Below, in pieces: positions 5,603-42,023 of a DNA stretch of 64,000 nucleotides. Position 1 is the first letter of the stretch. Each line of letters opens with the position of its first letter. Made by a program: the position numbers and the translations under genes. Below the pieces are notes generated by a model. It did not search any database, was not told where the DNA came from, and worked only from the letters and a program-made list of their open reading frames with translations. The stretch spans positions 142,857-206,856 of IMG/VR virus record IMGVR_UViG_3300028883_000032. One strand, given 5' to 3'.

Positions 5603-5733
5603 AAGAAAAAATATTTACGAAGAATAAATAATGGAAATTATCAATTAACACGGCGAGCTCTCGGTAGGTGCTGCCACACTGGTGACCGAGATGAAGGTAT
5701 AGTCCACGCCTGCATGAAAATGTAGGGTTAGTG

Positions 5734-6714
5734 AGGAAAGGGGAATTCAAAAAAGGTGATTTGTGTGTCTATTGCGAAATAGATTCCATCTTACCAGAAC
5801 GCGAAGAATTTGAATTCCTACGCAGCAAAAAGTTTAGAATAAAAACACAGAAGATTCGTGGGATATTGAGTCAGGGAATAGCTTTTCCCATTTCAGTGTT
5901 GAATAAAGGAAAAAGCGAAGTAATCGTGGAACTGGTATCCAGTGATGATTCCAAAGATCCAGACCCATATATACACGTAGATGACGATTCAGGCCATGGG
6001 TCGGGCTCCACTTTCTTCTTGGGTGACGACGTAACTGCGTATTTAGGGGTAAAAAAGTATGAAGTCCCTATACAGTTTAAACAAGGCCAGTCCGCGGGGA
6101 ACTTCCCAGCTTTTATACATAAAACAGATGAGACCCGCATACAGACCTGTATAGAATGCTTGGAGGAGCTACATGGTAAGCCGTATTACATAACCACAAA
6201 AGTAGATGGAACTTCAGGAACATTTTATAGGAAAGACGACCACTTTGGGGTATGCTCGAGGAATTTCGAGAAAAAAGAAGGACAAAGCGTGTATTGGGAA
6301 GTCGCAAAAAAATACGACCTCAAATCCAAGTTGGAGAACTACGGCAAGGACGTTGCTATACAAGGAGAACTTGCGGGGCCGGGAATTCAAAAGAACAGGC
6401 TTGGGTTGGAAAGCACATCATTGTTTGTATTCAACATACAGGATATTTCGAAAGGTTGCTTTTTATCCTTCAACGAGGTCAAAGACCTTTGTAATGCCCT
6501 AGGTATCAACATGGTTCCCATTCTAGAAGAAGGTGAACACTTCAATTATACTTTTGAGCAACTTTTGGAATTAGCAGAACACAAGTACCTCAATGGGAGT
6601 CATGCCGAAGGTATTGTGATAAGACCACAAGTGGAAGAATATTCTCGTACCTTACACGGTAGGCTATCATTTAAAGTTATCAACAATAAGTTTCTGTTAA
6701 AAGGCGGGGATTAA
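5734..6714 (+). CDS. RNA ligase (DRB0094/Rnl5-like) exon 2
   Basis: KTDETRIQ, motif I TKVDGTS, QGELAGPGIQKN, EGIVIR, SFKVIN; spliced product 360 aa. Confidence 0.9.
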   Translation, partial: RKGEFKKGDLCVYCEIDSILPEREEFEFLRSKKFRIKTQKIRGILSQGIAFPISVLNKGKSEVIVELVSSDDSKDPDPYIHVDDDSGHGSGSTFFLGDDVTAYLGVKKYEVPIQFKQGQSAGNFPAFIHKTDETRIQTCIECLEELHGKPYYITTKVDGTSGTFYRKDDHFGVCSRNFEKKEGQSVYWEVAKKYDLKSKLENYGKDVAIQGELAGPGIQKNRLGLESTSLFVFNIQDISKGCFLSFNEVKDLCNALGINMVPILEEGEHFNYTFEQLLELAEHKYLNGSHAEGIVIRPQVEEYSRTLHGRLSFKVINNKFLLKGGD

Positions 6715-8382: not shown

Positions 8383-9603
8383 GTGAATAACTACTTCGTA
8401 TTTCGCACGCTTAACCAAATAGCTCCGGGATTACGGGAGAATGTTCAAAAGGGCAACCCTGTTATAATATCGGGAACCATGCCACCAGCGGGGGCAACGT
8501 GGTTACAAGACAATTCCGATGAATGGCATCAAATAACACGAACCTGTCTTGATGAATCGTTGGAATTGTGCCCCTCGTTATTTGTATCCTTTAAAATAAA
8601 AAATGTAAGCGGTATATATTTTCAGCACCTCGAATATTATGATGAGAGAGAAATCTATACTATATTGTTTGGGGCTTCTGACGCCGAATATCGTGAAGTT
8701 ATAAACAAAATTCTAGACGAAGAGCACCAAACCGAGGTTGAAGAAGCAAAAGAAGCAGGGGATACGAGAGAGTGGGATAACACTATTCTTGATGAAGGCA
8801 CCAAGGAAGAAATTGATACAAAATTTAAAATATTTTTAGATTCGAAAGACATGTATGCAGATGAATTACGAGTTCCTTGGAAAATGGGAATGGTTTTTAT
8901 AGGCCCCCCAGGCAACGGAAAAACCCGATCAATTCGTGCGATATGTAAAAAGTATGGTTTAAGACTATCTTCCATATCTGAATATATTACCCCCAATGGG
9001 TTAAATCTCCCAAAGGCCATAGACGAGGGCAGTTCCACCGGCTTAATACCCATCATTGAAATAAATATTTGGGCAAAGTTATATGATGCCAAATATCCTG
9101 AATCTCCCAAACCTACTGTAATTGCCGCCGAGGATCTCGACAAAACATTATACGGTTCTGGAAGAGATGCCGCAACAATAAGACTTTCTGATTTTCTAAA
9201 TCAGGTGGATGGAATAAGCTCCACCCATGGAATAATACTAATTGCTACTACAAACCATCCAGGTGACTTGCCTGAAGCAATTTTCGGGAGACCGGGACGT
9301 TTTGACCATGTATGGGAATTTAATAAGCCCGGTAAAGAACAGTTACAAAAATACTTTGAATCCCGTAATTTCACGGTAAAAGGTGAGACAGATTTGGCTG
9401 AAGTCGTAAGTGAAAACGAGATGTCAATGGCTTTTGCAGAAGCCCTAATCATTTCAGCAAAAACTACTTACAAGAAAAATGAGTTCACTGATGAGGAAAT
9501 ACTTCCTCTTATTCAGAGGTTAAAAGACCATCAGGAACTTGCTAAAAAGTATTGCGCTGATATAGAAAAAAGACAAAAGGATGGATTTGGTTTTTCTAAT
9601 TAA
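8383..9603 (+). CDS. AAA+ ATPase
   Basis: Walker A GPPGNGKT, Walker B AAEDLD, SRH TTNHP...RPGRFD. Confidence 0.9.
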   Translation: MNNYFVFRTLNQIAPGLRENVQKGNPVIISGTMPPAGATWLQDNSDEWHQITRTCLDESLELCPSLFVSFKIKNVSGIYFQHLEYYDEREIYTILFGASDAEYREVINKILDEEHQTEVEEAKEAGDTREWDNTILDEGTKEEIDTKFKIFLDSKDMYADELRVPWKMGMVFIGPPGNGKTRSIRAICKKYGLRLSSISEYITPNGLNLPKAIDEGSSTGLIPIIEINIWAKLYDAKYPESPKPTVIAAEDLDKTLYGSGRDAATIRLSDFLNQVDGISSTHGIILIATTNHPGDLPEAIFGRPGRFDHVWEFNKPGKEQLQKYFESRNFTVKGETDLAEVVSENEMSMAFAEALIISAKTTYKKNEFTDEEILPLIQRLKDHQELAKKYCADIEKRQKDGFGFSN

Positions 9604-9995: not shown

Positions 9996-10214
9996 ATGAA
10001 GGGGACAGTTGCGTGGTTTCGAGAGGACCACGGGTATGGTTTTATCCAACCCGATGGCACAACTGAAAAGGAAAACCAGATCTTCGTACATTACTCCTCC
10101 ATCAAGAGTAAAAAGAAGTTCAAAGTGTTGGTCATGGGTCAGAGGGTCGAGTTTACCAAGGAAGTGTCTCCGAAGGGGGCATCGGCAGCTCATGTAGTTG
10201 TTATTGATCAGTAG
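9996..10214 (+). CDS. csp: cold-shock domain protein
   Basis: MKGTVAWF...GYGFI...IFVHYS; SD GGAGG. Confidence 0.92.
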   Translation: MKGTVAWFREDHGYGFIQPDGTTEKENQIFVHYSSIKSKKKFKVLVMGQRVEFTKEVSPKGASAAHVVVIDQ

Positions 10215-10224
10215 TATATTTGTG

Positions 10225-10758
10225 ATGTTTTGGAAAATAAGGTTAAAGGGCAACAATAGAAAAACCCCCGTACATATTTTCGTTGACTGGGAAAACGTAA
10301 AAGGCGTTGTTCCTCCTCACGGGCGCTTTTCCGCAGATTTTTGGTACGAAAGGCTTTCCTCTATTGTTGGCAGTGATACCTATCCTGACATGCGTGTTTC
10401 CATATATATGCCGAAATATACCAGACATTTTCCTGTGTGGGAAAAACAGAAAAAGTTTTTGACAGAAATACGAAACCACAAAAACATGAGAGCTGTTCTA
10501 GGATACCAACTTTACGACCATTACAGGTTGAGGGAGAAACTAGTTGACACAACTCTTGTGAGAGATGTTGTTGAACTAGCCATTACCTCAAAAACAAAAC
10601 TTGTTGTAATTATAGTATCCGGGGATGGTGATATGTACCCAGCTGTGGAAACTGCAAAAAAATATGGACACCGTGTAATAACGGCGTCCTCATCTTACTC
10701 CACAAGCAATTTAGTAAAAAAAGAAAGTGATTTACATGTCAGACTTGAGCTACCTTAA
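10225..10758 (+). CDS. NYN/LabA (PIN-like) domain protein
   Basis: IFVDWEN...EKLVDT...VSGDGDMYP. Confidence 0.85.
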   Translation: MFWKIRLKGNNRKTPVHIFVDWENVKGVVPPHGRFSADFWYERLSSIVGSDTYPDMRVSIYMPKYTRHFPVWEKQKKFLTEIRNHKNMRAVLGYQLYDHYRLREKLVDTTLVRDVVELAITSKTKLVVIIVSGDGDMYPAVETAKKYGHRVITASSSYSTSNLVKKESDLHVRLELP

Positions 10759-10772
10759 CAGGTAGCTTTTTT
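10748..10772 (+). terminator. terminator between convergent genes
   Basis: GAGCTACCT/AGGTAGCTT hairpin plus T-run. Confidence 0.6.
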
Positions 10773-13700
10773 TACCAGAATACTCCCTTTTCAGGATCAA
10801 ACTGTGTAGCAAACTCGTTTGCATATAAGTATGCTGGCATGGGGTCATAGCCGTGTATATTTGTTTTGCTTGCTTTTGCTGCAGAGTCTTGAATAACCAT
10901 TTTGATGTTATTACTAGTAACACGGCTTAACCAGTCGTCCCGTTCATGTGGTAAAACATTTATACTCTTGAAATAAGGTTTATATTCTATTTGTGGAAGC
11001 CCTTCTGCTTTTCTCTCTTTATTTTCCTTATCAACTACAGTTTTAAAAACTGTATCCCCCTTTATAAACCTTGAGTTATCTGGAGCATTTGTAATATAAG
11101 CGTTATCGCTTATACCCCTGATTATAGTTTCGAATGTACGCTTGTGGAATTTTCCGTCGTAAACGTTATCCATCCTATCCACAAGAGATTTTTGAGCAGT
11201 AATGAAGTCTGTTAATTCCGCTAATTCTTGCGGTTTTTTTGTACCAGTACTTATAGGTTCTCCACGAGTAACTATATCGTCTATTTTAACCAGCAAGTCT
11301 CTTCCTGGTTTTACGTGGTGAAGTTTTGGACTATTACCATCTCCCATAATGGCAACTTCCCAACCTCCCGCCATTCCGGGTTTTATATTTATTACCCTAC
11401 CTTCTATTTGTGCAAGTTCCGCTTTTCCTGGTAAAATTGCCGGGACCTTTACAGTACGCTCTAATTCTGGGAATCCCGCTGTCACTCCTCCACCGGCTAG
11501 AGCGCTTCCCCCAGAGTGGAAAGTTTGCATGGTCAATTGTGTTGCTCTTTCAGATACAGCCTGTCCGTCTAAAACTCCAGCATTATAACCAATTTGTGGC
11601 AATTTTCCTTCAGGGGTTAGCCCATAACAAAAAGCACACATACCTCGTTCTGTTTCACAAGTTAGAGGGCTTCTAACCTTTATTAAACTGTTACCCAGTT
11701 TTTTAACCAAGTCAGGGTGGATTAAAGCCGTAATAGTATCCCCTACTTCTACCACTCCCGGCACTCTTTGCTGGCTTATACGCCCTATAACGTTTTTGTC
11801 ACTAGCAGATAACTCTATTCCATTTGTTGTACCACAATCTTGTTCGGTTATAAGCACGTCCTTCAGATTAGTTAAAAGCGCCTTATTTAAGGCACCAGTA
11901 TCTTGTGTGTTTACGGCGCGATCAACGGTGCCTTTTCTTGCAGAATACATGTGGTTCCAGAATGAAAAGTCGTCTACTCCCTCTGCCCAGGATTTTTCAA
12001 CAGGAGTGGGGATTGGGCGCCCCTTAACATCCAAAAGAACCCCAGGCATGGTTAGTACTTGCCTAATACTGTCTGGTTTTCCCTGTGATCCAGAATCAAG
12101 CATGTGGAAAAACCTATTATCGCTTTTACGCGCATTTTCATATAATTCTTTTTGAACTTTCTTGGAAGCTTCGTTATATATTTCAGCACGTTCCAGTGGA
12201 GTTTGGACACGGTTTGCTTTTTTGTGAGCAATTTCCATAATAGGACCACGAGCACTACGGTCCATATCCAAGTCCGTTATACTCAAAGTTATAGGTTTAC
12301 GATAAGAGTATTCTTTTCCAAGCTCTTTAAAGTGGTTCATCACCTCAGCAAACTTTTTAGGATGCCTATCGCTTATTTCCTTCATTATACGCTTAACCGT
12401 GTCAGCATCAAATACTAATGTTCTGTCTTTTAAGTCCTCCGGAAGCTTTTCTAAAACAAGCTCCTTACCGTAAGTTGTACGCCCTACTCCTGTTAATTCA
12501 ACTTCCTCCGCTTCGTCAAGTTTGCCGTCTCTAACATCATCAGCCATTTTTTTGAATGTGCTATATTTTTTGCCATCATATTTTCTATCCACTTTTGTAA
12601 GATACCAAAGACCTTGTTGAAATATTTGACTAAATGAGCCAATGATGGGCATAACAGGATCATCAAAATGGGGCCCATGTTGATAAATGTTTTTAGAAGG
12701 AATCATGCCAAACGCTTCACGAACGGCATCAGTGGATACAGGCACATTAACTGACATGGCGTCACCGTCAAAGTCCGCATTAAAACCCTTAACAATAAGA
12801 GGATTTAATTTAATAGCTTGGCCATCAATGCGCTTTGGTATTGCAGCTTGTACACTATGTTTATGTAACGATGGAGCACGATTAAGTAGTACTGGTCTGT
12901 TCTCCATGGCCAAGTCTATTCCACGCAGGCCAAGTTCTGTTTCTTCTTGAATTTCCTTACGTGCAGTCAGGGGACTGTGACCACGTTTGGTCAGCTCCTG
13001 TACGGCAAATGGAAGATAAATTTCTTTTGCCATTCCTGTGGGAATTCCTACCTCGTCTACTCCCAAGTTTGGATCAAGTGTAATGGTGCTGCGAGCAGAA
13101 AGATCCTGTCGTTTGCTCCAGACATTACTTTGTATAAAACCTTCTTTAGGTTCGGACCCAGATAGTGTGCGTAAGGCCCCCTCGTATTTTTCTTTCCCAA
13201 AGTGGGTTAGTTCTGTTAATCCCTGTAACTCCTTAAAATGATCGTAAAGCGACTTACGCACTTCATCAACTTTTATTTTCTCTGTGCCAATTTCCTTATC
13301 GCTAGCTAGGCCATCGTTAAGTTTCGATATGTCCCTATAATGATAATTAATTGGACTTACCATTAAATCACCGGAAGGTAATGGGTAAACTGGCCTAAAT
13401 ACTGGAGGCATGACTGGAATTTTATTTGTGGTATAGGCTTCTTCCGCTGTCATTCCTAGTTTATCTAGAGCTTCTAAGTATCGTACGCGCTTATTAAGTT
13501 TATTTACGCGTGACTCCGGTGCGGTTTTTAATTCATTTTTTGATTCCTGTAATTCTTTTTTTACATCTATAGCACGTAGGTCAGTAATTATTTTATCTAT
13601 TCCACCCTCTTCCCCTTTAAGGCGCGCCTCATACTGAGGGCGGGTAATACCAAGCAATGATTGGATTGCTTTTTCATACATTGGAGAAGGCATGGTATCA

Positions 13701-16700
13701 GTTAATTCTATGTGGCTCCATTTTGTACCTCCATGTCCTCCGGTAATTTTTGAGTCAAACAACCCGCCTTTTAAAGTTGCTAAATTTTTACCCATTAGCA
13801 TTTGTCCGGCATCGTCTAATTTACCGGCACTAATTTCAGATATTTTTTTATCCGTCAAAGGCATTAACTGAATTTCATTACCCTTTTTTTCACTATCAAC
13901 CCCGGCGGCCTTCATGTAGGCTACCATTTTATCAAATACAAAAGATTTTTGGGGAGTTGGTAGTGGCAAACCTAATTGTATTGCTCTCCACAGCTCATCA
14001 TTCTTTTGTGATTTTATAGCAGTGAAATCTCTTAAATTGTGTTTTGCACCATGCGCTAGGAGAACATATGTTTGCATAGGATCGACGGATTGTCCCCCAG
14101 ACTCTCCTCTACCGGGAGCCTCATTTACATTGTAGGAACCATAACTACGGCTTTTTTCTTTATGTTCAACCACATGCATTAGTTTTAGTATGTACTGAGG
14201 ACCAGTAAATACTTTCGATTTAAGAGGCTTACCGTCTTTGCCATCTAATACCACCTCGTCAGGTTCAATTCCTTGTTTTTTAAGTTCGTTAAGGAGTATG
14301 TTTAATTTGTCCTTACCATCGAAATTACGAATGACGTAAGGTTTACCTGTTTTTTCAGCAATTTTAGCCGCTGCTGTTTCTAACAATTGTGAGGGATTCA
14401 TTCTAGAAGGTATTCCAAACGGAGACATTATCATGTCTACACGCTTACCACTAGCGGTATGTGGAGCCTCCTCGTCAGGTATGATCTTAACAACAATCCC
14501 TTTACCACCGTATCTGTTGGCTAGTTTGTCTCCCTCCACTAATGGGTGACTTACTTTCACACGAACTACAATTTTACGGCCCATTTTAGAAACATACATT
14601 ACTTCCCCGGGCTCATCAAAATCATATACAACACTCCGGTCGTCATATAATTTAGACACCTTACGGTTCATATTCTTTAGTATTCTCTGTTCGTCGGTCA
14701 TTTCTCTTGGTTCAAGGTGTGCTATGAGTACATCACCCTTTTTAACTCTTTCACCTTCTTTTATAATTCCTTCCGAATCAAGTTTATTATAACTTCCAGT
14801 ATTTATAAAGGCACCTGGATATTCAGCGGCAAGCTTATCCTTATTAAAAATACCATTAGTGGTTCTATGCGAAGTATAATTGTGCAGACTAGAATGTGTA
14901 AACTTTTTAGCAAACGAATCTGTTACCACCAACCCGTCTTCAAATGAATAGCCCTTGTAAGGCATATAAGCTACTTGGACATTTGCGCCAAGACCTAATG
15001 TCTTTTTTCCACCAAAAGGTGGCTCAGCTTCAAAGTTATTTTTTGCTAATTCTTGTTTGGCCTTAACTACATCACCCGGTTTAACAGTAGGAGTACTGTG
15101 CAAGAACGACTCTTGGTTCATTGGAAAATAGTTATACAGCCCTATTTTAAGGCTTTTTGACTCCCCTTCAGGTTTTATATGAATGTAGTCAGGTGTTACT
15201 TTAGTTACAACACCTGATTTAATGTCGTCGGGAACATATGGATTAAGATAGTCACCAATCGACTCATCAAAACTTTTATCGATTAATGGCCGACCAACTT
15301 GTACTAGAGGAGCTTCCCCATTATCAATGGTAAAAGCTTGTGAAGTGTTTTTAGCAGCCATTAGTGCCCTGTTTCCTTGGGTATGTTCTAAAAATGGCGT
15401 TAAGTTTGTTGGCCACCCAAACAGAGATTGAGGTTTAATGATGTAGCCATCAACATCTTTATGGGCAAAAACTTCTGCTTTTCCCTTATTATATCCCCGT
15501 ATTACCCTTTTTGTAAAGTCCCCGTCATGTGGTATTGGTTTTCCATTTTTTAAGACATACTGCTCACCAAAACCAACTCTCATGTTCCACAACTCATGCG
15601 GAGAGACGTACTTAATATCACCGTCTTTCATAATTACGGGAGTTGTCATCTGTCCTTTACTGTTTTTTTCAACAAACAGACTCAAAGGAAGAGAAATCCC
15701 CACTTTGGAACTATCCGGAGTTTGTACAGGATCAAGAAATCCAATATGAGACGGATGGACGTTACGGGTTTCCATGGTTACCTCATGCATGGAAGGTATT
15801 CCTCCCGTACCTAATACTGAAGTTTTTCTCCATTCTGATAATATTGAGACTGGGTTCGTTTGAGGAGGTGTCGCACTAAGGTCACTTGTAGTAAAGAAAC
15901 TTTTTATGGGCTTACTATAAGTATCTGGACTTATAATATCCCTAATCTGATCCTTTCTGTCCGTACGGAAACGTAAATTACCTGTAATTTGTTTGTCCTT
16001 TTTTTCAAGAAAGAACCCGAGTAGATCATCCACAGTCATGAGGGACTTAAATACTAGCGAGTCACGCTCATCAGGATCTGCATCACCGCGTTGGACAGCC
16101 AGTAACTTTTTACTAACATCCATTAACGTATCTTTATTAACTTTTTTGTGTGATGCACCCAAAGTTATCAGTGTTGTATCTGGGTCGACTGCGGTTGTCT
16201 CAAAGTACTCATATAACATCTTTTTTGCTTCTTGTGGGGTTTTTGGTTTTTGATGTAAAACCTTTTCCACAAGGTTGACCCACATATCGGGCTCTTCTCC
16301 TTTATCGCTATTTTTGGCATAAAGGTCCTTGCCCCACAACTCAAGCATTTCTTGGTCTGTTACACCCAACGCCTTAAGAATGTTGTACAGTCTATAATTT
16401 TGATTCCCAGCACGCAATAGAAAAATTCCTTTTGTCGGGTCTAAAGTAAGTTTAAAATTAAAACCCTTTGCAAGATTAAATTGGGATTCAAAGTCACCAT
16501 TATCTTTCATGCGTGTATATATACCAGACTTAAGGCGCAACTGATTTGTTGTTTGGTATTCATTGCCGTCAATAATAGCACTAAATCTTTGTGTTTGTTT
16601 AGGTATATTGGCTATTTTTATTTTAGGTTTTTCATCAACAATGTCCCCTGTTTTTTTGTCGACAAGTCTTAAATGTCCGTAAACTGGAACAGACCAAGTA

Positions 16701-16912
16701 CTACCACTAACTTTGGCTTTCTTTTGGGCTGGAAGATCGTTTGTGGGGGCGTCCTCGTCCCCTATGTCCAAACTAATCAATTCCAATTTTTTATTTTGTG
16801 CATCAATGGGGTATTGATTGGATATAAAATTACCAATTACATCATAAATTTTAGAATTTTGAACATTAGGATTTAATGAGTCTTTTAATTCTCTGTCTGC
16901 ATTCCTCATCAT
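10772..16912 (-). CDS. phage multisubunit-type RNA polymerase, fused beta-beta' polypeptide
   Basis: beta motifs GYSFEDG, GDKLANRYGGKG, PSRMN, LKLMH; beta' motifs NRAPSLH, NADFDGD, DCGT...CYG, TQLTMQTFHSGG, all in one 2046-aa ORF. Confidence 0.95.
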   Translation of the reverse strand: MMRNADRELKDSLNPNVQNSKIYDVIGNFISNQYPIDAQNKKLELISLDIGDEDAPTNDLPAQKKAKVSGSTWSVPVYGHLRLVDKKTGDIVDEKPKIKIANIPKQTQRFSAIIDGNEYQTTNQLRLKSGIYTRMKDNGDFESQFNLAKGFNFKLTLDPTKGIFLLRAGNQNYRLYNILKALGVTDQEMLELWGKDLYAKNSDKGEEPDMWVNLVEKVLHQKPKTPQEAKKMLYEYFETTAVDPDTTLITLGASHKKVNKDTLMDVSKKLLAVQRGDADPDERDSLVFKSLMTVDDLLGFFLEKKDKQITGNLRFRTDRKDQIRDIISPDTYSKPIKSFFTTSDLSATPPQTNPVSILSEWRKTSVLGTGGIPSMHEVTMETRNVHPSHIGFLDPVQTPDSSKVGISLPLSLFVEKNSKGQMTTPVIMKDGDIKYVSPHELWNMRVGFGEQYVLKNGKPIPHDGDFTKRVIRGYNKGKAEVFAHKDVDGYIIKPQSLFGWPTNLTPFLEHTQGNRALMAAKNTSQAFTIDNGEAPLVQVGRPLIDKSFDESIGDYLNPYVPDDIKSGVVTKVTPDYIHIKPEGESKSLKIGLYNYFPMNQESFLHSTPTVKPGDVVKAKQELAKNNFEAEPPFGGKKTLGLGANVQVAYMPYKGYSFEDGLVVTDSFAKKFTHSSLHNYTSHRTTNGIFNKDKLAAEYPGAFINTGSYNKLDSEGIIKEGERVKKGDVLIAHLEPREMTDEQRILKNMNRKVSKLYDDRSVVYDFDEPGEVMYVSKMGRKIVVRVKVSHPLVEGDKLANRYGGKGIVVKIIPDEEAPHTASGKRVDMIMSPFGIPSRMNPSQLLETAAAKIAEKTGKPYVIRNFDGKDKLNILLNELKKQGIEPDEVVLDGKDGKPLKSKVFTGPQYILKLMHVVEHKEKSRSYGSYNVNEAPGRGESGGQSVDPMQTYVLLAHGAKHNLRDFTAIKSQKNDELWRAIQLGLPLPTPQKSFVFDKMVAYMKAAGVDSEKKGNEIQLMPLTDKKISEISAGKLDDAGQMLMGKNLATLKGGLFDSKITGGHGGTKWSHIELTDTMPSPMYEKAIQSLLGITRPQYEARLKGEEGGIDKIITDLRAIDVKKELQESKNELKTAPESRVNKLNKRVRYLEALDKLGMTAEEAYTTNKIPVMPPVFRPVYPLPSGDLMVSPINYHYRDISKLNDGLASDKEIGTEKIKVDEVRKSLYDHFKELQGLTELTHFGKEKYEGALRTLSGSEPKEGFIQSNVWSKRQDLSARSTITLDPNLGVDEVGIPTGMAKEIYLPFAVQELTKRGHSPLTARKEIQEETELGLRGIDLAMENRPVLLNRAPSLHKHSVQAAIPKRIDGQAIKLNPLIVKGFNADFDGDAMSVNVPVSTDAVREAFGMIPSKNIYQHGPHFDDPVMPIIGSFSQIFQQGLWYLTKVDRKYDGKKYSTFKKMADDVRDGKLDEAEEVELTGVGRTTYGKELVLEKLPEDLKDRTLVFDADTVKRIMKEISDRHPKKFAEVMNHFKELGKEYSYRKPITLSITDLDMDRSARGPIMEIAHKKANRVQTPLERAEIYNEASKKVQKELYENARKSDNRFFHMLDSGSQGKPDSIRQVLTMPGVLLDVKGRPIPTPVEKSWAEGVDDFSFWNHMYSARKGTVDRAVNTQDTGALNKALLTNLKDVLITEQDCGTTNGIELSASDKNVIGRISQQRVPGVVEVGDTITALIHPDLVKKLGNSLIKVRSPLTCETERGMCAFCYGLTPEGKLPQIGYNAGVLDGQAVSERATQLTMQTFHSGGSALAGGGVTAGFPELERTVKVPAILPGKAELAQIEGRVINIKPGMAGGWEVAIMGDGNSPKLHHVKPGRDLLVKIDDIVTRGEPISTGTKKPQELAELTDFITAQKSLVDRMDNVYDGKFHKRTFETIIRGISDNAYITNAPDNSRFIKGDTVFKTVVDKENKERKAEGLPQIEYKPYFKSINVLPHERDDWLSRVTSNNIKMVIQDSAAKASKTNIHGYDPMPAYLYANEFATQFDPEKGVFW

Positions 16913-17021
16913 TTCTCCCGGATTTTTGGAATAAGAATATACATAAGGCTTTCAAATTCGAGCATTGGAAGCCCGCTTTGGGAGGGGGTATTGCCCTCTT
17001 CATAATATACAACACAGGAGG

Positions 17022-17201
17022 GGTTAATGCAAGTTCTAGCAGGCATTTCTTCAAGAGTACGGCGTGAACACAACAGGACACGTGTTGATTCCCCAGGAAG
17101 GCTACGAAGAACATCAAGTTCCCGTGGGCCGAGAGTGAGAATTAACGTTCCTGAAAACGTACACGCAATGTGCTTCCTGCTACAGTAAGAACTTCATTAC
17201 C
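17022..17201 (+). ncRNA. putative 6S-like rod RNA (alternatively a 53-aa ORF, 17027-17188)
   Basis: End-to-end pairings AAGTTCT/AGAACTT, TAGCAGG/CCTGCTA, GCGTG/CACGC, CAGGA/TCCTG, GTTGATTC/GAATTAAC; promoter motif at 16926; hairpin terminator about 17230-17263. Confidence 0.4.
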
Positions 17202-18520: not shown

Positions 18521-19450
18521 ATGACTAAACAATCTATAAGCATATATAGTGTCCTTGATAAATCTCAAGAATATATAGAAGATATTATCTCTAACAAAGA
18601 AAAGCATTATATTACTTTTAGAATACCAAAACGTAATGGGCGTTTTCGTAAAATAGAGGCTCCTGACGACGCCTTAAAAGAGTTACAAACCACAATAAAC
18701 GAAAAAGTATTTTCTATTTATAAACCCCATCGTATAGCGCACGGATTTATTTCTAATAGATCGCCGAAAACAAATGCGGAAGCGCATGTGGGGGCAAAAA
18801 TAATCGTGGAAGTGGATATAAAGGATTTTTTCCCATCCATTAAAAAAGACAGGGTTATTAAAGTACTTGAGTACTTATTTGTTCAAAAAGCTGGAATGTT
18901 TAAATCTTCCGCCCATAAGCAGGAAGCAATAAAAGTCATATCAGAATTAATTACTCACCATGATAGGCTACCCCAAGGAGCCCCAACTAGTCCACCGTTT
19001 AGTAATCTATCGGTGCTAGGAATGGATAAAGACTTATTAAAATTAGAAGAGCCTTATGGTGCAACCGTAACTAGATACGCAGATGATATCACAATGTCAT
19101 CAGAATACAATGTACAATTGCCACAAGTTATCCCGGAATTACGTAAAATAGTGACCAAATATGGGTTTAAATTAAACAACGTTAAGACTCGAGTTATTCG
19201 ACAAAATCGTAGGATGTTGGTAACTGGAGTAGTAGTTAACGAAAAACCGAACATTAGAAAGGATGTTCGACGTAGTTTAAGAGCTAAATTACATAATTAC
19301 AATAGGGATCACACCCCTATCACCCAAGAAGAATACCAACGTATTCAGGGGCAAATTGCTTGGATTAAGTATTTAAACCCTCTCCATGGAGATAGGCTCG
19401 GAGAACAATTGGACCGCGTTCAACGAGAAGAACCCACAGTAGTCTTATAG
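18521..19450 (+). CDS. retron-type reverse transcriptase
   Basis: IPKRNG..RKIEAP, region X NAEAH, DIKDFFPSI, LPQGAPTSP, YADD, region Y VTG; no fused effector. Confidence 0.92.
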   Translation: MTKQSISIYSVLDKSQEYIEDIISNKEKHYITFRIPKRNGRFRKIEAPDDALKELQTTINEKVFSIYKPHRIAHGFISNRSPKTNAEAHVGAKIIVEVDIKDFFPSIKKDRVIKVLEYLFVQKAGMFKSSAHKQEAIKVISELITHHDRLPQGAPTSPPFSNLSVLGMDKDLLKLEEPYGATVTRYADDITMSSEYNVQLPQVIPELRKIVTKYGFKLNNVKTRVIRQNRRMLVTGVVVNEKPNIRKDVRRSLRAKLHNYNRDHTPITQEEYQRIQGQIAWIKYLNPLHGDRLGEQLDRVQREEPTVVL

Positions 19451-19994: not shown

Positions 19995-20137
19995 GAGAGA
20001 TTGTCCGCCGGGTCTAGCAAATAGATATTCGTAAAGGCAAGCTAGTACTTCCCCGCTGGGGTGGTCTCTCATTTTTTAGCCTATTGATTTTTACTACGGA
20101 AATGTGTATATTAATATACAACAACCAAGTATTATAT

Positions 20138-21484
20138 ATGGCTAGAAAACCTAGAATTTTAGCATGGTGTGATACTCCCACAGTAACTACCGGTTTTGGA
20201 AATGTGGCAAAAAATTTGCTTAGAGATGCCCATAAAGAGTTCGATATTGATATAGTAGGTATTAATTACTGGGGGACTAAAAAATATGATACAGACAAGT
20301 GGTTCATTTATTCTACTGGACACAATATGGATCAGATGGGATACAAAGTTCTTCCACTAGCCATGGAAAGCAGTAAACCCGATCTTGTTTTTTTATTCCA
20401 AGACTTGTTTGCTATCGATTTAGCATACCCATTAATACGCAAAGTAGATAAAGATACTCCTGTTGTCATATATTTTCCGATAGATGGTGGACCATTCAGT
20501 CGTACATGGGGAAATGTTTTAGAAGACAAAGGCATAAAGAAAATATTCACCTATTCTGAATTTGCAAACAGAGAAATACTTAAAGTAGTTCCAGATCTAA
20601 ATAAAGAGTTAGAAATAATGTATCATGGAGTTGATGTGGATACATTTAAACTTCTTCCCAAAGAGGAGGTGGACGAATTTAACCGTAGTAGGGGCTGGGA
20701 TGGTAGGTTTGTAATGATGAATCTTAATAAATTTCAGCCTCGAAAAAATATCATGAACACAGTACTGGTGGGGTCACTGTTGGTTCATGGGTACAAGAAA
20801 TGCAGATGCGGGCACTATTATTTATCAAAATATGATACTTGCGATTTAAACGGTTGTGGTCAAGAGGACGTAATAGAAGAAGTTAAACCAAAACGTGATA
20901 TAACTTTATATATGCACATGAACATAATGGAGCGTATAATGGGACCATTAAGATCATGTGGGTTGTCTGCCATTGCATTAAATACAGGATGGACCGATGC
21001 CGATATAGACAAATATGGTACTTTGGCCCTTCTTGATCCTGAAAGGAATTTAGTATCAAACCCCTTCAGTGAAGAAGAATTAAATATGTTATATAACGCA
21101 ATAAGCGTAAATATAACAACAACTTTGGGAGAAGGGTGTGGTTTATCACTGTTAGAAAGTGCCGCCACAGGCACAACTAGTATAGCACCCAACCATAGTG
21201 CAATTCCAGAACAAATAGGTGACACCGGGCACCTTGTAAAAAATGCAGCATACTTCTCTATGCACAATGATAATTCTCACATGCGTCCAATAGTGAGTGT
21301 TCCCGCGATGGTTGATGCGGTTGAAATTGAATATAAGAAATGGCTAGACAATGGCAGGGAAAAAATAATAAATTATGCTGCAATAGAACGGGTTCATGAG
21401 AAGTTTTTATGGGACGATAAACGTGAACAATTAATGTCTGCTTTTAGAGAATTAACCAAAGATGTAAACAATGAAAAAGAGTGA
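20138..21484 (+). CDS. GT-B (family 4-like) glycosyltransferase
   Basis: TGFGNV, HGVD, RKN, EGCGLSLLES; Cys-rich insertion. Confidence 0.88.
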   Translation: MARKPRILAWCDTPTVTTGFGNVAKNLLRDAHKEFDIDIVGINYWGTKKYDTDKWFIYSTGHNMDQMGYKVLPLAMESSKPDLVFLFQDLFAIDLAYPLIRKVDKDTPVVIYFPIDGGPFSRTWGNVLEDKGIKKIFTYSEFANREILKVVPDLNKELEIMYHGVDVDTFKLLPKEEVDEFNRSRGWDGRFVMMNLNKFQPRKNIMNTVLVGSLLVHGYKKCRCGHYYLSKYDTCDLNGCGQEDVIEEVKPKRDITLYMHMNIMERIMGPLRSCGLSAIALNTGWTDADIDKYGTLALLDPERNLVSNPFSEEELNMLYNAISVNITTTLGEGCGLSLLESAATGTTSIAPNHSAIPEQIGDTGHLVKNAAYFSMHNDNSHMRPIVSVPAMVDAVEIEYKKWLDNGREKIINYAAIERVHEKFLWDDKREQLMSAFRELTKDVNNEKE

Positions 21485-26287: not shown

Positions 26288-27408
26288 TATAGCTCCGAAA
26301 GCAATCCACTGCGTGTCGGCAAAGGTAAGGATTTTAACACATCTAGTCCTTCCGGCCCTGACAAGTCCTCAGCTGTATCTTTATCTACATAAGCACTAAT
26401 ATCTTTTTCAGATAGCTTCTGTAAATCTGCGGAAGTTACTAATTGCCCGTCCACGATAGCCTCGGCAATTTTTTCTGTCTTGAGAGTAGCAATTAACGGA
26501 TCTTCAATTCTGGTATTATAAAACTTTCTCCCGCCCCACTCTTCATCAAGTCTTTCTAAAAGTGCTGCTATTTTTATAGGACCAAATTCAGCCTTTTTCT
26601 CAATTAGTTTGTCATAGAGCCCCTGCACTTCGTGTTCTACTGGTGCGTATGACTTCCTTATATTGATGTGTTTACCAAAATTTTCGTTAAACTCATCAGC
26701 TATAAGATCGGAGTATTTATTAAATAAGCCTGCAATTTTGACGCCGTCTTCTTTAACTTCCTGCGCATCGACAGCCTTTGCCAAATTCATTGCAAATTCT
26801 AGCCTGTCTCCCAATTCTAATTCTATATAGTTATTATCAAAATAAGAATTGGCTGTTTTTACATATTCCGGGGAATCGAGTCTCCATCTTTTTTCTTTCG
26901 GTAATGCAAAGTCACTGCTGGCCTCCAAACCCGCATTTTTTTGCATTAGCGAATTATTACGACGCTTCTTAGCCCAAGCAACTTTGTCTATTTCATCAGT
27001 ATTTACAATGTTGCCATTATTGGGAATCTCCCCGACATACTGTTCAAGATCTTCAGGGAAGTCGAATCCCCAGCGTTTCGATGCCTTCTTTAAATAATAA
27101 GAAGCTGTTTTACATATCTCGTCTGGAAGACTATCGGCTTTTGCAGCTAAAAGTTTAGCATTTAATTCAGATAAATCTTTAGAAATATGTGCGAATTTAT
27201 TAAAACTCCCAACCCCCGGAATTCGTAGGACAAGAGCCACGTCATGTTTACCTAGCTCTTGTTGTTCTTCATCTGTAGGAACGTGTGCTTCTTTAATGGA
27301 ATCATCCATGGAGTCCATTACTCCGATAATAAGAGTGGTGTCCCCACTAGACAGTTCATCCACTACATCGTACCTAAGCGTTGCCAGTTTGTTCATTTGA
27401 TTCTCCAA
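26287..27408 (-). CDS. hypothetical (putative head/internal) protein
   Basis: 373 aa, repeated KxA motifs. Confidence 0.55.
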   Translation of the reverse strand: MENQMNKLATLRYDVVDELSSGDTTLIIGVMDSMDDSIKEAHVPTDEEQQELGKHDVALVLRIPGVGSFNKFAHISKDLSELNAKLLAAKADSLPDEICKTASYYLKKASKRWGFDFPEDLEQYVGEIPNNGNIVNTDEIDKVAWAKKRRNNSLMQKNAGLEASSDFALPKEKRWRLDSPEYVKTANSYFDNNYIELELGDRLEFAMNLAKAVDAQEVKEDGVKIAGLFNKYSDLIADEFNENFGKHINIRKSYAPVEHEVQGLYDKLIEKKAEFGPIKIAALLERLDEEWGGRKFYNTRIEDPLIATLKTEKIAEAIVDGQLVTSADLQKLSEKDISAYVDKDTAEDLSGPEGLDVLKSLPLPTRSGLLSEL

Positions 27409-28073: not shown

Positions 28074-28085
28074 AACTCCCTTTGG

Positions 28086-28337: not shown

Positions 28338-28349
28338 TGCTTACTCCTA

Positions 28350-39288: not shown

Positions 39289-41250
39289 TTACGCCAATTC
39301 CGGTGTGTTTGCTAACCAAGGTGATACAGAATCCTCATTACTATCTTCAGAAAATTCAAAACCGGCATTTGGGTCTTCATCTGAAGTAAAAGACTCATTA
39401 ATAGCAGTAGCCCTGTTTGATGCCAACTCATCTTGTTGTGCTAGCGCAACATTTTCTACTTCTGGAGTATGGTCTGCCATTTGCGATGCCGCTGCCTGAC
39501 TTTTATTTCTAGAAGATAAATAGCATGTCGCATCAGCGGCAGCTTCCCCTATACTAACAATTTGGCCAGCTAGAGACATAGAAGCGGACATTACATTTAC
39601 AGCGGTTCCAATAGCATTTCCCAAATCTCCGCTTGAAATAAATTTACCAACAGAACCTCCCATGCTTTCTAAAAATGCAATTGCTTCTCGTATTAGGGGG
39701 CTGTTTTCATCGAACTTATTCAAATAACTTAAAGTAACCTTATCTTGATTAATTCCGGCTTCTATAACCCTTCTTAAATCTGACATCCTAACGACAGCAT
39801 TTATTAGGGCTTGTTTTCCCAGCCCTTCTGTCACATTACCTTTTACATTTGATACTACTGTGGATATTAAGTCTATTATTGAACTTAAAAACATTGCTTT
39901 AAGAACATGATAATTATTATCAAAATCGTTTTGCGACTGCAAATACTTAATTATTTCTTTAAATTGCGCAGCTTGCTCTTGCACCGCAGCAAGATCGGCT
40001 GCCGCTGCACCGATAAACCCACCACTTTGTCCTGTTTGCCATATAGCTTCTAAAGCAATAGTCCACCCTGGAATAGCTAAAGCAGCCTCTGTCTTTTTAG
40101 GGGGTACAGATTCTGTTTTATCTTCCATCTCTTCTCTAACGTCTTTTACTGTTCCTCTTTCTCTAATAATGAAGTTAAGTAACAAATTCATTGTTGTGCT
40201 TAATCCACTAATTGTGGCATCAAGGTTTTTCATAGAGTTTAATGTTAAGTTAACAGCTACGCCTTGGGCTTCCAAACTTGGCTCGCGGGTTTCTACTGTA
40301 ATTTCGTTTAATTTATATTCTCCAGTATCCGTGATTGTCCAACTTTTGCCACCGCTTGCAAATTGCCATGTACCATCAGAAAAAAACGACTGAACTGACA
40401 TATCAGGATTTGATGGTCTGTCAACAGTTAGTTTCAATAGGTTAATAACGTCTGGAGTGGGAGTAACGCGATATGTTGCTCCTAAAGCTGCCAATCCCAT
40501 CAATTTTACTGTGTCATTTAGTCTCCTAATATATTGTTTATAGTGCTCGTCTAGGAATTTTTTAGTATATGCCCAGTTTGTTTTTATATTTGGGTCTCCC
40601 TCGTCGTTATCTGTAAATTCATTAAAACCGCTCTTTAGAGTTCCTTGTATGGTATCTCCGCCCGTTTGTGTGCGTGCCCTACCTGTCCCGCCATTAAGAA
40701 AGTCAATGGCTGAACTTACATTATCCATTGCGCTACTGTGCAAACTCGAAGCAAAAATACCGGTTGTGCGAGCTCTCTCGTATACGGCCGAAATTGTTTT
40801 TTCTGCCGATTTAAGTTTTCTCTCAGCAGCTCTTACGCGATCAATAATGTTGGTTGCCCCATCAAAGGTTCCAAGATAGGCTAATTCACTTAATGCCCCT
40901 ATTAGTGCATTCACCATTACAATTGCATCTTCCGCCGTGCTAATTCTTTGTTGTACCTGTTGCTTCGCAACTCGGTTAGCTAGTGCAAATAATGCTAATT
41001 TCATTTGTGGTAACAAAGTCATGGCCATAGCAAACATTGCAACCCCTCCGGATATTATTTGGCCTAATCCGGTTTCTGTTAAAACTGTTTGTATAGCTTG
41101 AGATAGTAAAGTAGATGCAGCACTAGAAAGTAGACCCAACAGAGCTTCAACTCCTAACCACCCATTATCAGCAGCATTCGCTAAAAGGGAAGCTTCTCTA
41201 TCACTCATGTACTCTGCATATCTCTGATTTAATCTGTCTTGGCAGGACAT
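39289..41250 (-). CDS. hypothetical virion protein
   Basis: 653-aa helical Ala-rich ORF. Confidence 0.55.
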   Translation of the reverse strand: MSCQDRLNQRYAEYMSDREASLLANAADNGWLGVEALLGLLSSAASTLLSQAIQTVLTETGLGQIISGGVAMFAMAMTLLPQMKLALFALANRVAKQQVQQRISTAEDAIVMVNALIGALSELAYLGTFDGATNIIDRVRAAERKLKSAEKTISAVYERARTTGIFASSLHSSAMDNVSSAIDFLNGGTGRARTQTGGDTIQGTLKSGFNEFTDNDEGDPNIKTNWAYTKKFLDEHYKQYIRRLNDTVKLMGLAALGATYRVTPTPDVINLLKLTVDRPSNPDMSVQSFFSDGTWQFASGGKSWTITDTGEYKLNEITVETREPSLEAQGVAVNLTLNSMKNLDATISGLSTTMNLLLNFIIRERGTVKDVREEMEDKTESVPPKKTEAALAIPGWTIALEAIWQTGQSGGFIGAAAADLAAVQEQAAQFKEIIKYLQSQNDFDNNYHVLKAMFLSSIIDLISTVVSNVKGNVTEGLGKQALINAVVRMSDLRRVIEAGINQDKVTLSYLNKFDENSPLIREAIAFLESMGGSVGKFISSGDLGNAIGTAVNVMSASMSLAGQIVSIGEAAADATCYLSSRNKSQAAASQMADHTPEVENVALAQQDELASNRATAINESFTSDEDPNAGFEFSEDSNEDSVSPWLANTPELA

Positions 41251-42023
41251 TAAAAGTATTCCATATGGTTTTCTACATCAACAGCTATTTGACTTCGTAT
41301 TTTTCGTACTTGCGATTCAGGCATGTTCAGTCTGTCTGCTATTTCAGCGGTCGTCAATTGTGGATTACCTCCCCAACCAAAGGTATACTCCATTATTTTC
41401 TTTGTTTTATTGGGGGCCGTGTGATAAATAAGTCTAGCTATTTCCAGAGCTTTATTTTTAGAATGAAATCCTGCATCAAAGAAAGAACTGGTATCTTCTT
41501 TTCCGGTTCCTATGCTCAAATCTTGCCTTAATTCGGCATTCATTCTTTCGACTTCTTTCGGGGACCAAGCCAAGGCGTCAGCTATTTCGTAAGTTGTTGG
41601 AGGCCTGTTTAACTCATCTTCTAGATTTGATTTAATGTTCTGAAATCTAGAAATTGCAATCCCACGATGTTCAGGTATTTTTCCGACATTTTGATATTGC
41701 AAAACGTATCTTTGAAGATGCTTTAAGTGATTAGTTACGTGTGTATTTAAAGCTGCACCTTTATTAGGATCGTAGGTATCAAAACTTTTTACTGTAAGTC
41801 TTCTCGCCTCTGATTCTAATGCAGGTCTTGGTAATGGCGCACCAGTAAATTTATTTACATTACTTTGTATAACAGGATCGAGGCTTTTTAATAGATAAGG
41901 CACAACGGCTTTATCACCCATATGATACTGCTTCCAGAGATCAACTTCGCGTTCTTTGAGCTGGGATCTAGACAGATCCACCGGTATTTGAAAGCTCTTC
42001 ATAAATTCTATTTCCTTCATCAA
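41250..42023 (-). CDS. sigma70-family sigma factor
   Basis: YDPNKGAALNTHV (region 2), LNRPPTTYEIADAL (region 3), TTAEIADRLNMPESQVRKI (region 4 HTH). Confidence 0.85.
   Translation of the reverse strand: MMKEIEFMKSFQIPVDLSRSQLKEREVDLWKQYHMGDKAVVPYLLKSLDPVIQSNVNKFTGAPLPRPALESEARRLTVKSFDTYDPNKGAALNTHVTNHLKHLQRYVLQYQNVGKIPEHRGIAISRFQNIKSNLEDELNRPPTTYEIADALAWSPKEVERMNAELRQDLSIGTGKEDTSSFFDAGFHSKNKALEIARLIYHTAPNKTKKIMEYTFGWGGNPQLTTAEIADRLNMPESQVRKIRSQIAVDVENHMEYF

What the first reader, a model, noticed from the sequence alone, without database searches (positions are those of the whole stretch)
10772..16912. Compact single-chain beta-beta' RNA polymerase lacking the beta' N-terminal zinc ribbon
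Seen: both catalytic double-psi-barrel halves in one 2046-aa ORF, far shorter than cellular beta plus beta'. After GGLFDSKITGG it runs directly to SHIEL, without the Cys-rich zinc-binding domain found at this position in bacterial beta'. No alpha subunit in the window; a sigma70-like gene lies 25 kb away. Established: phiKZ-like RNAPs are split into several subunits, whereas this enzyme is fused and bacterial-like. Inference: a minimal two-component RNAP.
Basis: partly seen in the sequence, partly recalled or inferred. Interest (0 to 1): 0.6.

Follow-up and report, generated by a model that had tools for sequence, protein, structure and literature searches.

The report
Single-chain phage RNA polymerase with own sigma
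A 207-kb phage from marine sediment encodes a bacterial-type RNA polymerase whose two catalytic subunits are one protein lacking a usual zinc domain; it belongs to a large, mostly undescribed phage family that carries its own sigma factors but no assembly subunits.

Summary
Window 10772-16912 (-) is an intact 2046-aa ORF that carries a full bacterial beta module and then a beta' module. It has the catalytic NADFDGD motif, the beta lysines, the bridge helix, the trigger loop and the second zinc site. The beta' N-terminal zinc ribbon is replaced by a six-residue Gly-rich loop, and the protein's only four cysteines are the ligands of the second zinc site.

The fusion is not an artefact. More than 70 intein-free homologues of 1975-2110 aa, and 59 of 80 related IMG/VR loci, have the same single ORF, and none has the zinc ribbon. 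In relatives whose gene is split, the break lies inside beta' (at about residue 1100 or 1475), never at the beta/beta' boundary.

The complete 206,856-bp phage genome has no alpha or omega gene and has two sigma-70-family genes. The sigma in the window (41250-42023) sits among tail genes. It is conserved in 19 of 20 related phage genomes and is the orthologue of Salmonella phage Arash Gp10. Published mass spectrometry of Arash particles found Gp10 together with that phage's polymerase.

The most likely reading is a phage-owned, probably virion-delivered polymerase. Independence from host alpha is inferred, not shown. It is a new variant of a known kind (mReC-type phage polymerases).

The parts
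10772..16912 (-). Single ORF of 2046 aa (P0001): fused beta-beta' RNA polymerase catalytic chain
   Evidence: PDB phmmer to bacterial beta' gives E 1e-90. The AlphaFold model of residues 940-2046 has pLDDT 88.2 and pTM 0.84. Foldseek TM to B. subtilis and S. aureus beta' is 0.82-0.83.
13877..16912 (-). beta-like module (residues about 1-1012): lobes, Rif-pocket region, flap, beta double-psi barrel, C-terminal clamp part
   Evidence: The family HMM aligns with Salmonella RpoB 50-234, 421-933 and 1048-1340. SI1, SI2 and RpoB 1138-1190 are absent.
15797..15898 (-). Rifampicin-pocket region (residues 339-372) with substitutions at the positions of E. coli D516 (Pro) and H526 (Glu)
   Evidence: Across the family, D516 is P/E/A and H526 is E/G/V. 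Insensitivity to rifampicin is an inference from known resistance positions.
14648..14701 (-). beta flap-tip helix (residues 738-755), the docking site of sigma region 4 in bacteria; retained
   Evidence: It aligns with RpoB about 893-910.
14498..14533 (-). beta barrel motif GDK..R.GGKG with the two catalytic lysines (K796, K804)
   Evidence: (invariant in the family)
13841..13927 (-). Junction (residues 996-1024): the end of beta runs without a linker into beta' at about E. coli residue 17-20
   Evidence: The HMM matches RpoB up to residue 1340 of 1342 and RpoC from residue 22.
13703..13768 (-). Site of the missing beta' zinc ribbon (residues 1049-1070): GGLFD..ITGG, a 6-residue loop, then KWSHIEL
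   Evidence: All 71 family members have 0 Cys here. In the model the segment is a confident loop with pLDDT 81-94.
13220..13357 (-). beta' clamp helices (residues 1186-1231), the docking site of sigma region 2; retained
   Evidence: The model shows helices 248-269 and 273-291.
12761..12781 (-). Catalytic NADFDGD (residues 1378-1384)
   Evidence: It is invariant in the family.
11621..11845 (-). Second zinc site of beta' (C1693, C1752, C1759, C1762), the only cysteines in the protein
11507..11962 (-). Bridge helix (residues 1651-1680) and trigger loop (from residue 1783); no SI3 insert
41250..42023 (-). Sigma-70-family gene (257 aa) inside the tail/baseplate gene block; orthologue of Arash Gp10
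   Evidence: Pfam gives Sigma70_r3 at 43 bits and r4 at 22 bits. PHROG 351 (sigma) matches at 1.5e-10. It is 36% identical to Arash gp10, E 4e-27. The model has pLDDT 85, and the top 50 PDB matches are almost all SigA/sigmaS-type sigma chains, aligned over about 265 columns. It is present in 19 of 20 related phage genomes.

Best explanation
The ORF encodes the catalytic core of a phage-owned, bacterial-type RNA polymerase made as one chain. A complete beta module is joined directly to a beta' module that has lost its N-terminal zinc ribbon. Catalysis should work as in bacterial RNAP, through two double-psi barrels, Mg2+ bound by NADFDGD, the bridge helix and the trigger loop. Promoter recognition is probably supplied by the phage's own sigma-70-family proteins, which would dock on the retained clamp helices and flap-tip helix. 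By homology with phage Arash, the polymerase and the sigma encoded among the tail genes are probably packed into the virion and delivered with the DNA. The second, RpoD/RpoS-like sigma (outside the window) would then direct another gene class. The permanent covalent beta-beta' link plausibly replaces the alpha-dimer assembly platform and omega. Shown: identity, fusion, zinc-ribbon loss, family-wide conservation, co-occurrence with sigma, and absence of alpha and omega genes. Inferred: binding of sigma, virion delivery in this phage, independence from host alpha, and insensitivity to rifampicin.
For: Identity and intact catalytic motifs.

Fusion as a family trait: 296 homologues at E<=1e-10, of which more than 70 are intein-free chains of 1975-2110 aa. 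Among 80 IMG/VR loci, 59 have a single ORF. Where relatives are split, the break is at about residue 1100 (L194) or about residue 1475 (Arash, D69 and 13 loci), so the beta/beta' boundary is always covalent.

Zinc ribbon: absent in all 71 aligned members, and the protein has only 4 Cys.

Alpha and omega: none in this complete genome, and alpha is found in 0 of 20 related genomes.

Sigma: the window sigma is conserved in 19 of 20 related genomes and in 13 of 13 that are at least 90% complete. Its Arash orthologue Gp10 and the Arash polymerase Gp206/Gp216 are among the proteins with the most spectra in purified particles (PMC10585845).

Phylogeny: phage polymerases form one strongly supported group apart from 14 cellular ones.

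Promoters: a phage-specific promoter-like 10-mer occurs 24 times, 23 of them on the + strand, mostly in intergenic DNA 20-70 nt upstream of genes.

Docking: the sigma to clamp test gave weak support, score 0.43 against a best control of 0.01.
Against: Nothing here tests whether host alpha or omega joins the enzyme. The Arash MS used a phage-only database, so host alpha could not have been seen. That MS also listed 116 proteins, including metabolic enzymes, so some 'virion' proteins may be carry-over, as its authors themselves note. In this genome the polymerase gene is not next to the portal gene as it is in Arash, and no virion data exist for this phage. Canonical TTGACA-N17-TATAyT sites upstream of several genes could mean that host RNAP also transcribes part of the genome. 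The complex score is weak and may reflect memory of solved sigma-beta' complexes.
Confidence: 0.65

Rival explanations
1. Hybrid enzyme: the fused chain is the catalytic part but still assembles on the host's alpha dimer, and perhaps omega, so it is not self-sufficient.
For: All cellular RNAPs need alpha-like subunits (PMC7598289). Most of the bacterial scaffold is retained. No experiment on any relative excludes host alpha. Natural Helicobacter fused beta-beta' enzymes are cellular RNAPs; that they still use alpha is my own knowledge, and the fusion itself is described in PMC1557499.
Against: These phages infect unknown and probably diverse hosts, yet the polymerase is only 27-30% identical to any cellular one, so conserved alpha contacts are unlikely. 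A virion-delivered enzyme (by the Arash homology) would have to be packed with alpha or find it after entry. The phiKZ and AR9 enzymes show that phage multisubunit RNAPs can work without alpha. The beta' C-terminal tail that omega wraps is replaced.
Confidence: 0.25
2. Not virion-delivered: the enzyme is made after infection and serves only middle or late transcription, while host RNAP reads the early genes.
For: Canonical sigma-70-like -35/-10 sites lie upstream of several genes. The polymerase gene here is not embedded in the structural block. The Arash authors allow that abundant enzymes may contaminate particles.
Against: Arash Gp206 has the highest spectral count of all particle proteins and Gp10 has 100% coverage. 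The Gp10-like sigma gene sits inside the tail/baseplate block both here and in Arash.
Confidence: 0.3
3. The fusion is an assembly or frameshift artefact, or a recently captured cellular rpoBC.
For: None beyond the prior that metagenome contigs can be chimeric.
Against: The same architecture is found in hundreds of independent contigs from JGI, ENA, NCBI, Logan and Tara. A second assembler gives the identical sequence. The junction residues are conserved. The tree separates the phage clade from all sampled cellular lineages with full support.
Confidence: 0.01

Closest known systems
mReC phage RNA polymerases (Weinheimer & Aylward 2020, PMC7481178)
   Same: They are tailed-phage contigs from metagenomes (IMG/VR) whose RNAP is readily recognised by cellular beta and beta' models but branches apart from all cellular lineages. 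The module sizes are compact (beta about 1000-1100 aa, beta' about 890-1010 aa). Some source samples are the same ones.
   Different: Every mReC entry I read in their tables (one of 14 parts of Supplementary Data 2) has separate beta and beta' genes, and the paper applies 'fused' only to crAssphage. Here the whole core is one ORF. A split relative I examined (L194) breaks about 90 residues inside beta', so its 'beta' gene carries the beta' N-terminus; the paper does not mention this feature. T4-type capsid PF07068, reported for mReC, was not found here, but that search was uninformative. I had no mReC sequences to place in a tree.
Salmonella phage Arash Gp206/Gp216/Gp10 and Vibrio phages D69/D181/D148
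   Same: These are the closest cultured relatives, about 29-31% identical. They share the beta to beta'-N fusion, the same sigma orthologue among structural genes, and a second sigma. In Arash the polymerase and Gp10 were found in particles by MS.
   Different: Their polymerase is in two genes, about 1525 aa plus about 606 aa, split at about residue 1475 of this protein, with several genes in between. The records annotate them simply as beta and beta' or as hypothetical proteins. The fusion, the zinc-ribbon loss and the lack of alpha are not discussed in the Arash paper.
Bacterial RNAP core alpha2-beta-beta'-omega with sigma-70
   Same: The fold is shared (TM about 0.8 to beta'), as are all catalytic elements, the second zinc site, the clamp helices, the flap-tip helix, and the use of sigma-70-family factors.
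   Different: It is one chain, with no zinc ribbon, no SI1, SI2 or SI3 inserts, a replaced beta' C-terminal tail, and no alpha or omega genes. Key rifampicin-pocket residues are changed.
Fused rpoB-rpoC of Helicobacter and Wolinella (Zakharova et al. 1999, cited in PMC1557499)
   Same: A natural covalent beta-beta' chain.
   Different: Those are cellular enzymes of about 2900 aa. That they keep the zinc ribbon and use alpha and omega is my own knowledge, not tested here. The phage clade is not nested in any sampled cellular lineage.
phiKZ/AR9 virion and non-virion multisubunit RNAPs
   Same: They are phage-encoded two-barrel enzymes without alpha or omega, and one set is packed in the virion. 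According to PMC7824862 the non-virion form has the beta' N-terminal Zn ribbon; that the virion form lacks it is my reading of that sentence, not a statement in the paper.
   Different: They are split into 4-5 polypeptides, are very divergent from cellular enzymes, and their genomes have no sigma factor.
crAss-like gp66 and YonO single-chain two-barrel RNAPs
   Same: Both barrels lie in one polypeptide, and some are virion-delivered.
   Different: They are so divergent that cellular beta and beta' models do not detect them. The present chain is detected at E 1e-62.

Membership tests
Bacterial-type multisubunit RNAP catalytic core (beta + beta') | beta' double-psi barrel with NADFDGD | tested here: met
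   Residues 1378-1384 are invariant in 40 aligned homologues.
Bacterial-type multisubunit RNAP catalytic core (beta + beta') | beta double-psi barrel with two catalytic lysines | tested here: met
   K796 and K804 lie in the GDK..GGKG motif and are invariant.
Bacterial-type multisubunit RNAP catalytic core (beta + beta') | Bridge helix, trigger loop, and overall beta' fold | tested here: met
   The model has pLDDT 88. Foldseek TM to Firmicute and E. coli beta' is 0.78-0.83.
Bacterial-type multisubunit RNAP catalytic core (beta + beta') | beta' N-terminal zinc ribbon (4 Cys) | tested here: not met
   It is replaced by a 6-residue loop. All 71 homologues have 0 Cys there.
Bacterial-type multisubunit RNAP catalytic core (beta + beta') | beta' second zinc site (4 Cys) | tested here: met
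   C1693, C1752, C1759 and C1762 are conserved.
Bacterial-type multisubunit RNAP catalytic core (beta + beta') | Separate beta and beta' polypeptides assembled on an alpha dimer, plus omega | tested here: not met
   It is one ORF. No alpha or omega gene is present in this genome, and alpha is absent from 20 relatives. Use of host alpha cannot be tested with these tools.
Bacterial-type multisubunit RNAP catalytic core (beta + beta') | Sigma docking elements (clamp helices, flap-tip helix) | tested here: met
   Both align with the Salmonella elements. The docking test gave only weak support, 0.43 against a control of 0.01.
mReC phage RNAP lineage | Tailed-phage genome whose RNAP is detectable with cellular models yet clusters apart from cellular lineages | tested here: met
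   Baseplate, endolysin and spanin genes are present. Pfam hits are strong. In the tree, phage and cellular groups are each 100*. The cellular sample was limited and contained no archaea or eukaryotes.
mReC phage RNAP lineage | beta and beta' as separate genes | tested here: not met
   It is a single ORF, whereas the mReC tables list two proteins per contig.
mReC phage RNAP lineage | T4-like major capsid protein (PF07068) | tested here: inconclusive
   No match at E<=0.01, but no control genome matched either, so the search is uninformative.
phiKZ-like jumbo-phage multisubunit RNAP | Core split into 4-5 polypeptides; no sigma factor in the genome | tested here: not met
   It is one chain and the genome has two sigma genes.
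Sigma-70 family (for ORF 41250-42023) | Regions 2, 3 and 4 in order | tested here: met
   Region 3 scores 43 bits, above the cut-off. Region 4 scores 22 bits, just under the 24.1-bit cut-off. Region 2 is not seen by Pfam. The three-domain model aligns over its full length with SigA and sigmaS chains at E 3e-9, and has a disordered 3.2-like linker at 167-188. Residues of the -10 reading helix differ from the bacterial consensus.

The most novel reading that the evidence does not exclude
A naturally minimal, self-sufficient bacterial-type transcription machine consisting of one catalytic chain plus one sigma, with no alpha, no omega and no zinc ribbon, packed in the phage head and injected with the DNA. 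In this whole phage clade the covalent beta to beta' link would be the ancestral substitute for the alpha assembly platform. That would explain why every secondary gene split lies inside beta' and never at the canonical subunit boundary. Loss of the zinc ribbon would be tied to passage through the tail or to freedom from host termination and antitermination control.
Probability: 0.35. Interest if true: 0.8.

Novelty: new variant of a known kind. Interest (0 to 1): 0.6.

Why it matters
All cellular RNA polymerases need alpha-like assembly subunits. The only known exceptions, the phiKZ and AR9 enzymes, are fragmented and hard to relate residue by residue to the bacterial enzyme. This chain is close enough to bacterial RNAP to align throughout, yet it is a single polypeptide with its own sigma factors. 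It therefore offers a tractable minimal model for studying assembly, sigma docking and the role of the zinc ribbon in RNA exit and termination. It could also serve as an orthogonal, probably rifampicin-insensitive transcription system. Cultured relatives (Salmonella phage Arash, Vibrio phage D69) make the key questions testable at the bench. For phage biology it defines a widespread group of 165-220-kb phages that likely bring their own transcription machinery.

Tried and rejected
- The search for related loci with the single protein found nothing in IMG/VR. The alignment-based scan worked.
- The PF07068 (T4 capsid) search of the genome was uninformative, because no control genome matched.
- I looked for this contig's relatives in the mReC supplement. 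Sample numbers overlap, but no listed contig is identical and no fused entry appears in the parts I read.
- Seven literature searches found no description of a fused bacterial-type phage RNAP.
- Apparent 'separate beta' proteins' of about 985-1095 aa at 43-45% identity are, for those examined, N-terminally incomplete pieces that start inside the fused chain. P0127 matches the ORF break expected at an in-frame TGA, as in L014.
- I found no late-promoter motif shared by the polymerase gene and the structural operon.
- Only one public run holds the sequence (marine sediment, probably the source), and no RNA run does, so expression could not be examined.
Full report
**1. What is there**

Window 10772-16912 (-) is one open frame of 2046 codons under the standard bacterial code, preceded by a GGGAGA ribosome-binding site. 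Pfam finds the beta domains Rpb2_3 and Rpb2_6 (E 1e-62), followed in the same chain by the beta' domains Rpb1_1, Rpb1_2, Rpb1_4 and Rpb1_5.

The window is the last 64 kb of a 206,856-bp IMG/VR virus record that CheckV rates as 100% complete. Its last 126 nt repeat near its start. The only public run that holds it is a marine sediment metagenome. The genome holds no second polymerase.

**2. Anatomy**

A profile of 71 homologues aligns with Salmonella RpoB residues 50-234, 421-933 and 1048-1340 (of 1342). It aligns with RpoC residues 22-64 (weakly), 160-945 and 1130-1347. The following are therefore missing:
- the lineage-specific inserts SI1, SI2 and SI3;
- RpoB 1138-1190;
- RpoC about 65-159;
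- the RpoC C-terminal tail, which is replaced by an unrelated 25-residue end.

The following are retained:
- the beta lysine motif and NADFDGD;
- the bridge helix and trigger loop;
- the second zinc site;
- the clamp helices and the flap-tip helix.

Beta ends and beta' begins (at about E. coli residue 17-20) without a linker, at residues about 1010-1015.

At residues 1049-1070 the conserved GLF motif is followed by a six-residue Gly-rich loop and then the conserved HIEL strand. The roughly 32 residues that form the zinc ribbon in bacteria are absent. The protein has four cysteines in all, and they are the four ligands of the second zinc site.

An AlphaFold model of residues 940-2046, built on 40 homologues, has pLDDT 88.2 and pTM 0.84. 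It models the ribbon site as a confident short loop. Its best PDB matches are Firmicute and E. coli beta' chains with TM 0.78-0.83.

**3. Not an artefact, but a family**

The word-index protein search returned 296 homologues at E<=1e-10. More than 70 are 1975-2110 aa long at 33-48% identity, and they come from JGI, ENA, NCBI, Logan and Tara contigs of up to 228 kb. Many others are longer because they carry inteins. All 71 aligned members lack cysteines at the ribbon site and share the same loop motif.

Of 80 related IMG/VR loci:
- 59 have one ORF spanning the whole protein;
- 2 are colinear but interrupted only by TGA codons;
- 13 are split at about residue 1410-1478;
- 6 are cut by contig ends.

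A second assembler reproduces the sequence exactly.

**4. Gene architecture in the clade**

Salmonella phage Arash and Vibrio phages D69, D181 and D148 are the closest cultured relatives, at about 29-31% identity. They have a gene of about 1525 aa (beta plus the N-terminal half of beta') and a gene of about 606 aa (the rest of beta'), separated by several genes.

Searching the beta' half alone, as the operators advised, turned up proteins of 915-1011 aa that begin at about residue 1095-1154 of this chain. For one of them (L194), the upstream 1096-aa 'beta' gene aligns with residues 13-1100 here. That includes the ribbon-less beta' N-terminus. It overlaps the next gene by 4 nt.

So in every architecture examined, the canonical beta/beta' boundary is covalently closed, and secondary breaks lie inside beta'.

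The published mReC tables list beta of about 1000-1100 aa plus beta' of about 890-1010 aa as separate proteins, and list no fused entry in the parts I read. The paper uses 'fused' only for crAssphage. The sizes suggest that many mReC enzymes are of the L194 type. I could not test this because I had no mReC sequences.

**5. Phylogeny**

I built a quick maximum-likelihood tree (LG+G4, 2021 columns, 36 rows). It puts all 21 phage chains on one side of a fully supported branch and all 14 cellular beta plus beta' concatenates on the other. The cellular set comprised Patescibacteria, Planctomycetota, Cloacimonadota and Salmonella. The Arash-type split forms are one supported group among the fused ones.

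The sampling is limited and the tree is unrooted. It excludes a recent capture from the sampled phyla and shows nothing beyond that. The top 'genome' hits (L114-L122) are whole-phage-sized contigs binned into unrelated MAGs, so they give no host clue.

**6. Partners**

The genome has no alpha (PF01000, PF01193) or omega (PF01192) gene, while all 14 control genomes matched. Alpha is also absent from 20 related phage records, 13 of which are at least 90% complete.

There are two sigma-70-family genes:
- One lies outside the window (G000:67465-68268) and has regions 1.2, 2, 3 and 4. It matches Arash gp196.
Its region 3 scores above the Pfam cut-off and its region 4 just below. Its model (pLDDT 85) aligns over its full length with SigA and sigmaS chains and has a disordered 3.2-like linker.

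The window sigma is found in 19 of 20 related genomes. It is the orthologue (36% identity, E 4e-27) of Arash gp10, which occupies the same position among structural genes.

In Arash particles, Gp206 had the most spectra of any protein (3516). Gp216 had 1210 spectra, and Gp10 had 100% coverage (PMC10585845). The authors note that this may reflect either packaging or carry-over. They searched only a phage protein database, so host alpha could not have been detected.

I ran a docking test of the sigma alignment against residues 1095-1425. It gave weak support, with a score of 0.43 against a best control of 0.01. That mark was reached by 58 of 80 solved complexes and 2 of 110 mismatched pairs. A score of 0.60 or under was seen in only 7 of those 80 solved complexes and in both mismatches that passed. 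The runs agree in at least 69% of contacts, and the partner pLDDT is at least 66. Because sigma to beta' complexes are solved, the pass may reflect likeness only.

**7. Promoter-like signals**

The 10-mer TGGAATAAGA, usually followed by (a/t)nGTA, occurs 24 times in the genome. Of these, 23 are on the + strand, mostly in intergenic DNA 20-70 nt upstream of + strand genes and often just after a hairpin and T-run.

Several - strand genes are preceded by near-consensus TTGACA-N17-TATAyT sites.

The structural block and the polymerase gene have neither motif. This fits a programme with several promoter classes, but which polymerase and which sigma read which class is unknown.

**8. Rifampicin pocket**

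At the positions of E. coli D516 and H526 this chain has Pro and Glu. Across the family these positions are P/E/A and E/G/V. Changes at these positions give resistance in bacteria (established knowledge), so insensitivity is predicted. That gives a simple test of host-polymerase independence in the cultured relatives.

**9. Verdict**

The enzyme is a single-chain, ribbon-less, bacterial-type polymerase of a large phage clade, co-conserved with its own sigma and lacking alpha and omega genes. Self-sufficiency and virion delivery in this phage are inferences. The kind (phage polymerases of cellular type, mReC; phage Arash) is known. The full fusion, the invariably closed beta/beta' boundary, the family-wide loss of the zinc ribbon and the conserved structural-module sigma were not described in anything I could find.

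Noticed in passing
window 4031, 6717, 7877, 9913, 16928, 58854, 63465 (+ strand) and 17 more sites in G000: A promoter-like 10-mer, TGGAATAAGA (then a/t-n-GTA), occurs 24 times and 23 of them are on the + strand. Most copies lie in intergenic DNA 20-70 nt upstream of start codons, often right after a terminator-like hairpin and T-run. It resembles an extended -10 element with an AATAAG hexamer.
   Followed up: partly
upstream of window 48587 (-) and G000 78329, 88248, 91251, 110562, 126172 (-): Near-consensus TTGACA-N17-TATAyT promoters lie upstream of several minus-strand genes. Some are arranged back to back with the 10-mer motif. They could be read by host sigma-70 RNAP or by the phage RpoD-like sigma.
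   Followed up: partly
L014 10190-15965 and L049 10133-14312 (IMG/VR relatives, 102 and 210 kb): The polymerase ORF of two relatives is interrupted only by TGA codons (5 and 3). Seven of these 8 TGAs align with Trp that is conserved in the family or present in the nearest relatives, suggesting TGA=Trp recoding in these phages or their hosts. Standard gene calling cuts their polymerase into pieces that look like separate subunits.
   Followed up: partly
homologues P0018-P0119; loci L054, L057, L077, L086: Many family members carry one or more inteins (LAGLIDADG and intein-splicing Pfam hits), which stretch the ORF to as much as 3597 aa. Vibrio phages D181 and D148 have a homing endonuclease within the polymerase region.
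   Followed up: no
L194 2714-9400: In one relative the polymerase is split about 90 residues inside beta', with a 4-nt gene overlap. A 127-aa protein with only a weak sigma region 4 hit lies directly downstream of beta'.
   Followed up: partly
L136 2800-9753 (contig binned as 'uncultured Bacillus sp.'): A 2317-aa single ORF holds beta plus beta' and sits on a long branch on the cellular side of the tree. It may be a second, independent fused lineage.
   Followed up: no
window 5731-6714, 8383-9603, 10198-10758, 18521-19450, 20084-21484: The polymerase gene is flanked by an RNA ligase, an AAA ATPase, a NYN-domain nuclease, a gene matching a PHROG 'polymerase'/reverse-transcriptase family (6.5e-66), and a glycosyltransferase. 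Together these form an RNA-metabolism-rich neighbourhood.
   Followed up: no
window 16866-17117 (-): An 83-aa ORF overlaps the polymerase start. It has no family hit and contains a + strand copy of the promoter-like motif, so it is probably not a gene.
   Followed up: partly
G000 6-131 and 206731-206856 (window 63875-64000): The last 126 nt of the record repeat near its start, and the two copies differ in the length of a poly-C run (C10 against C9). This explains why the record is classed as linear even though it looks complete or circular.
   Followed up: partly
window 27393-29123 (-): An amidase-type endolysin and a weak Rz-like spanin match lie at the end of the structural block. A spanin would suggest a Gram-negative host.
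   Followed up: no
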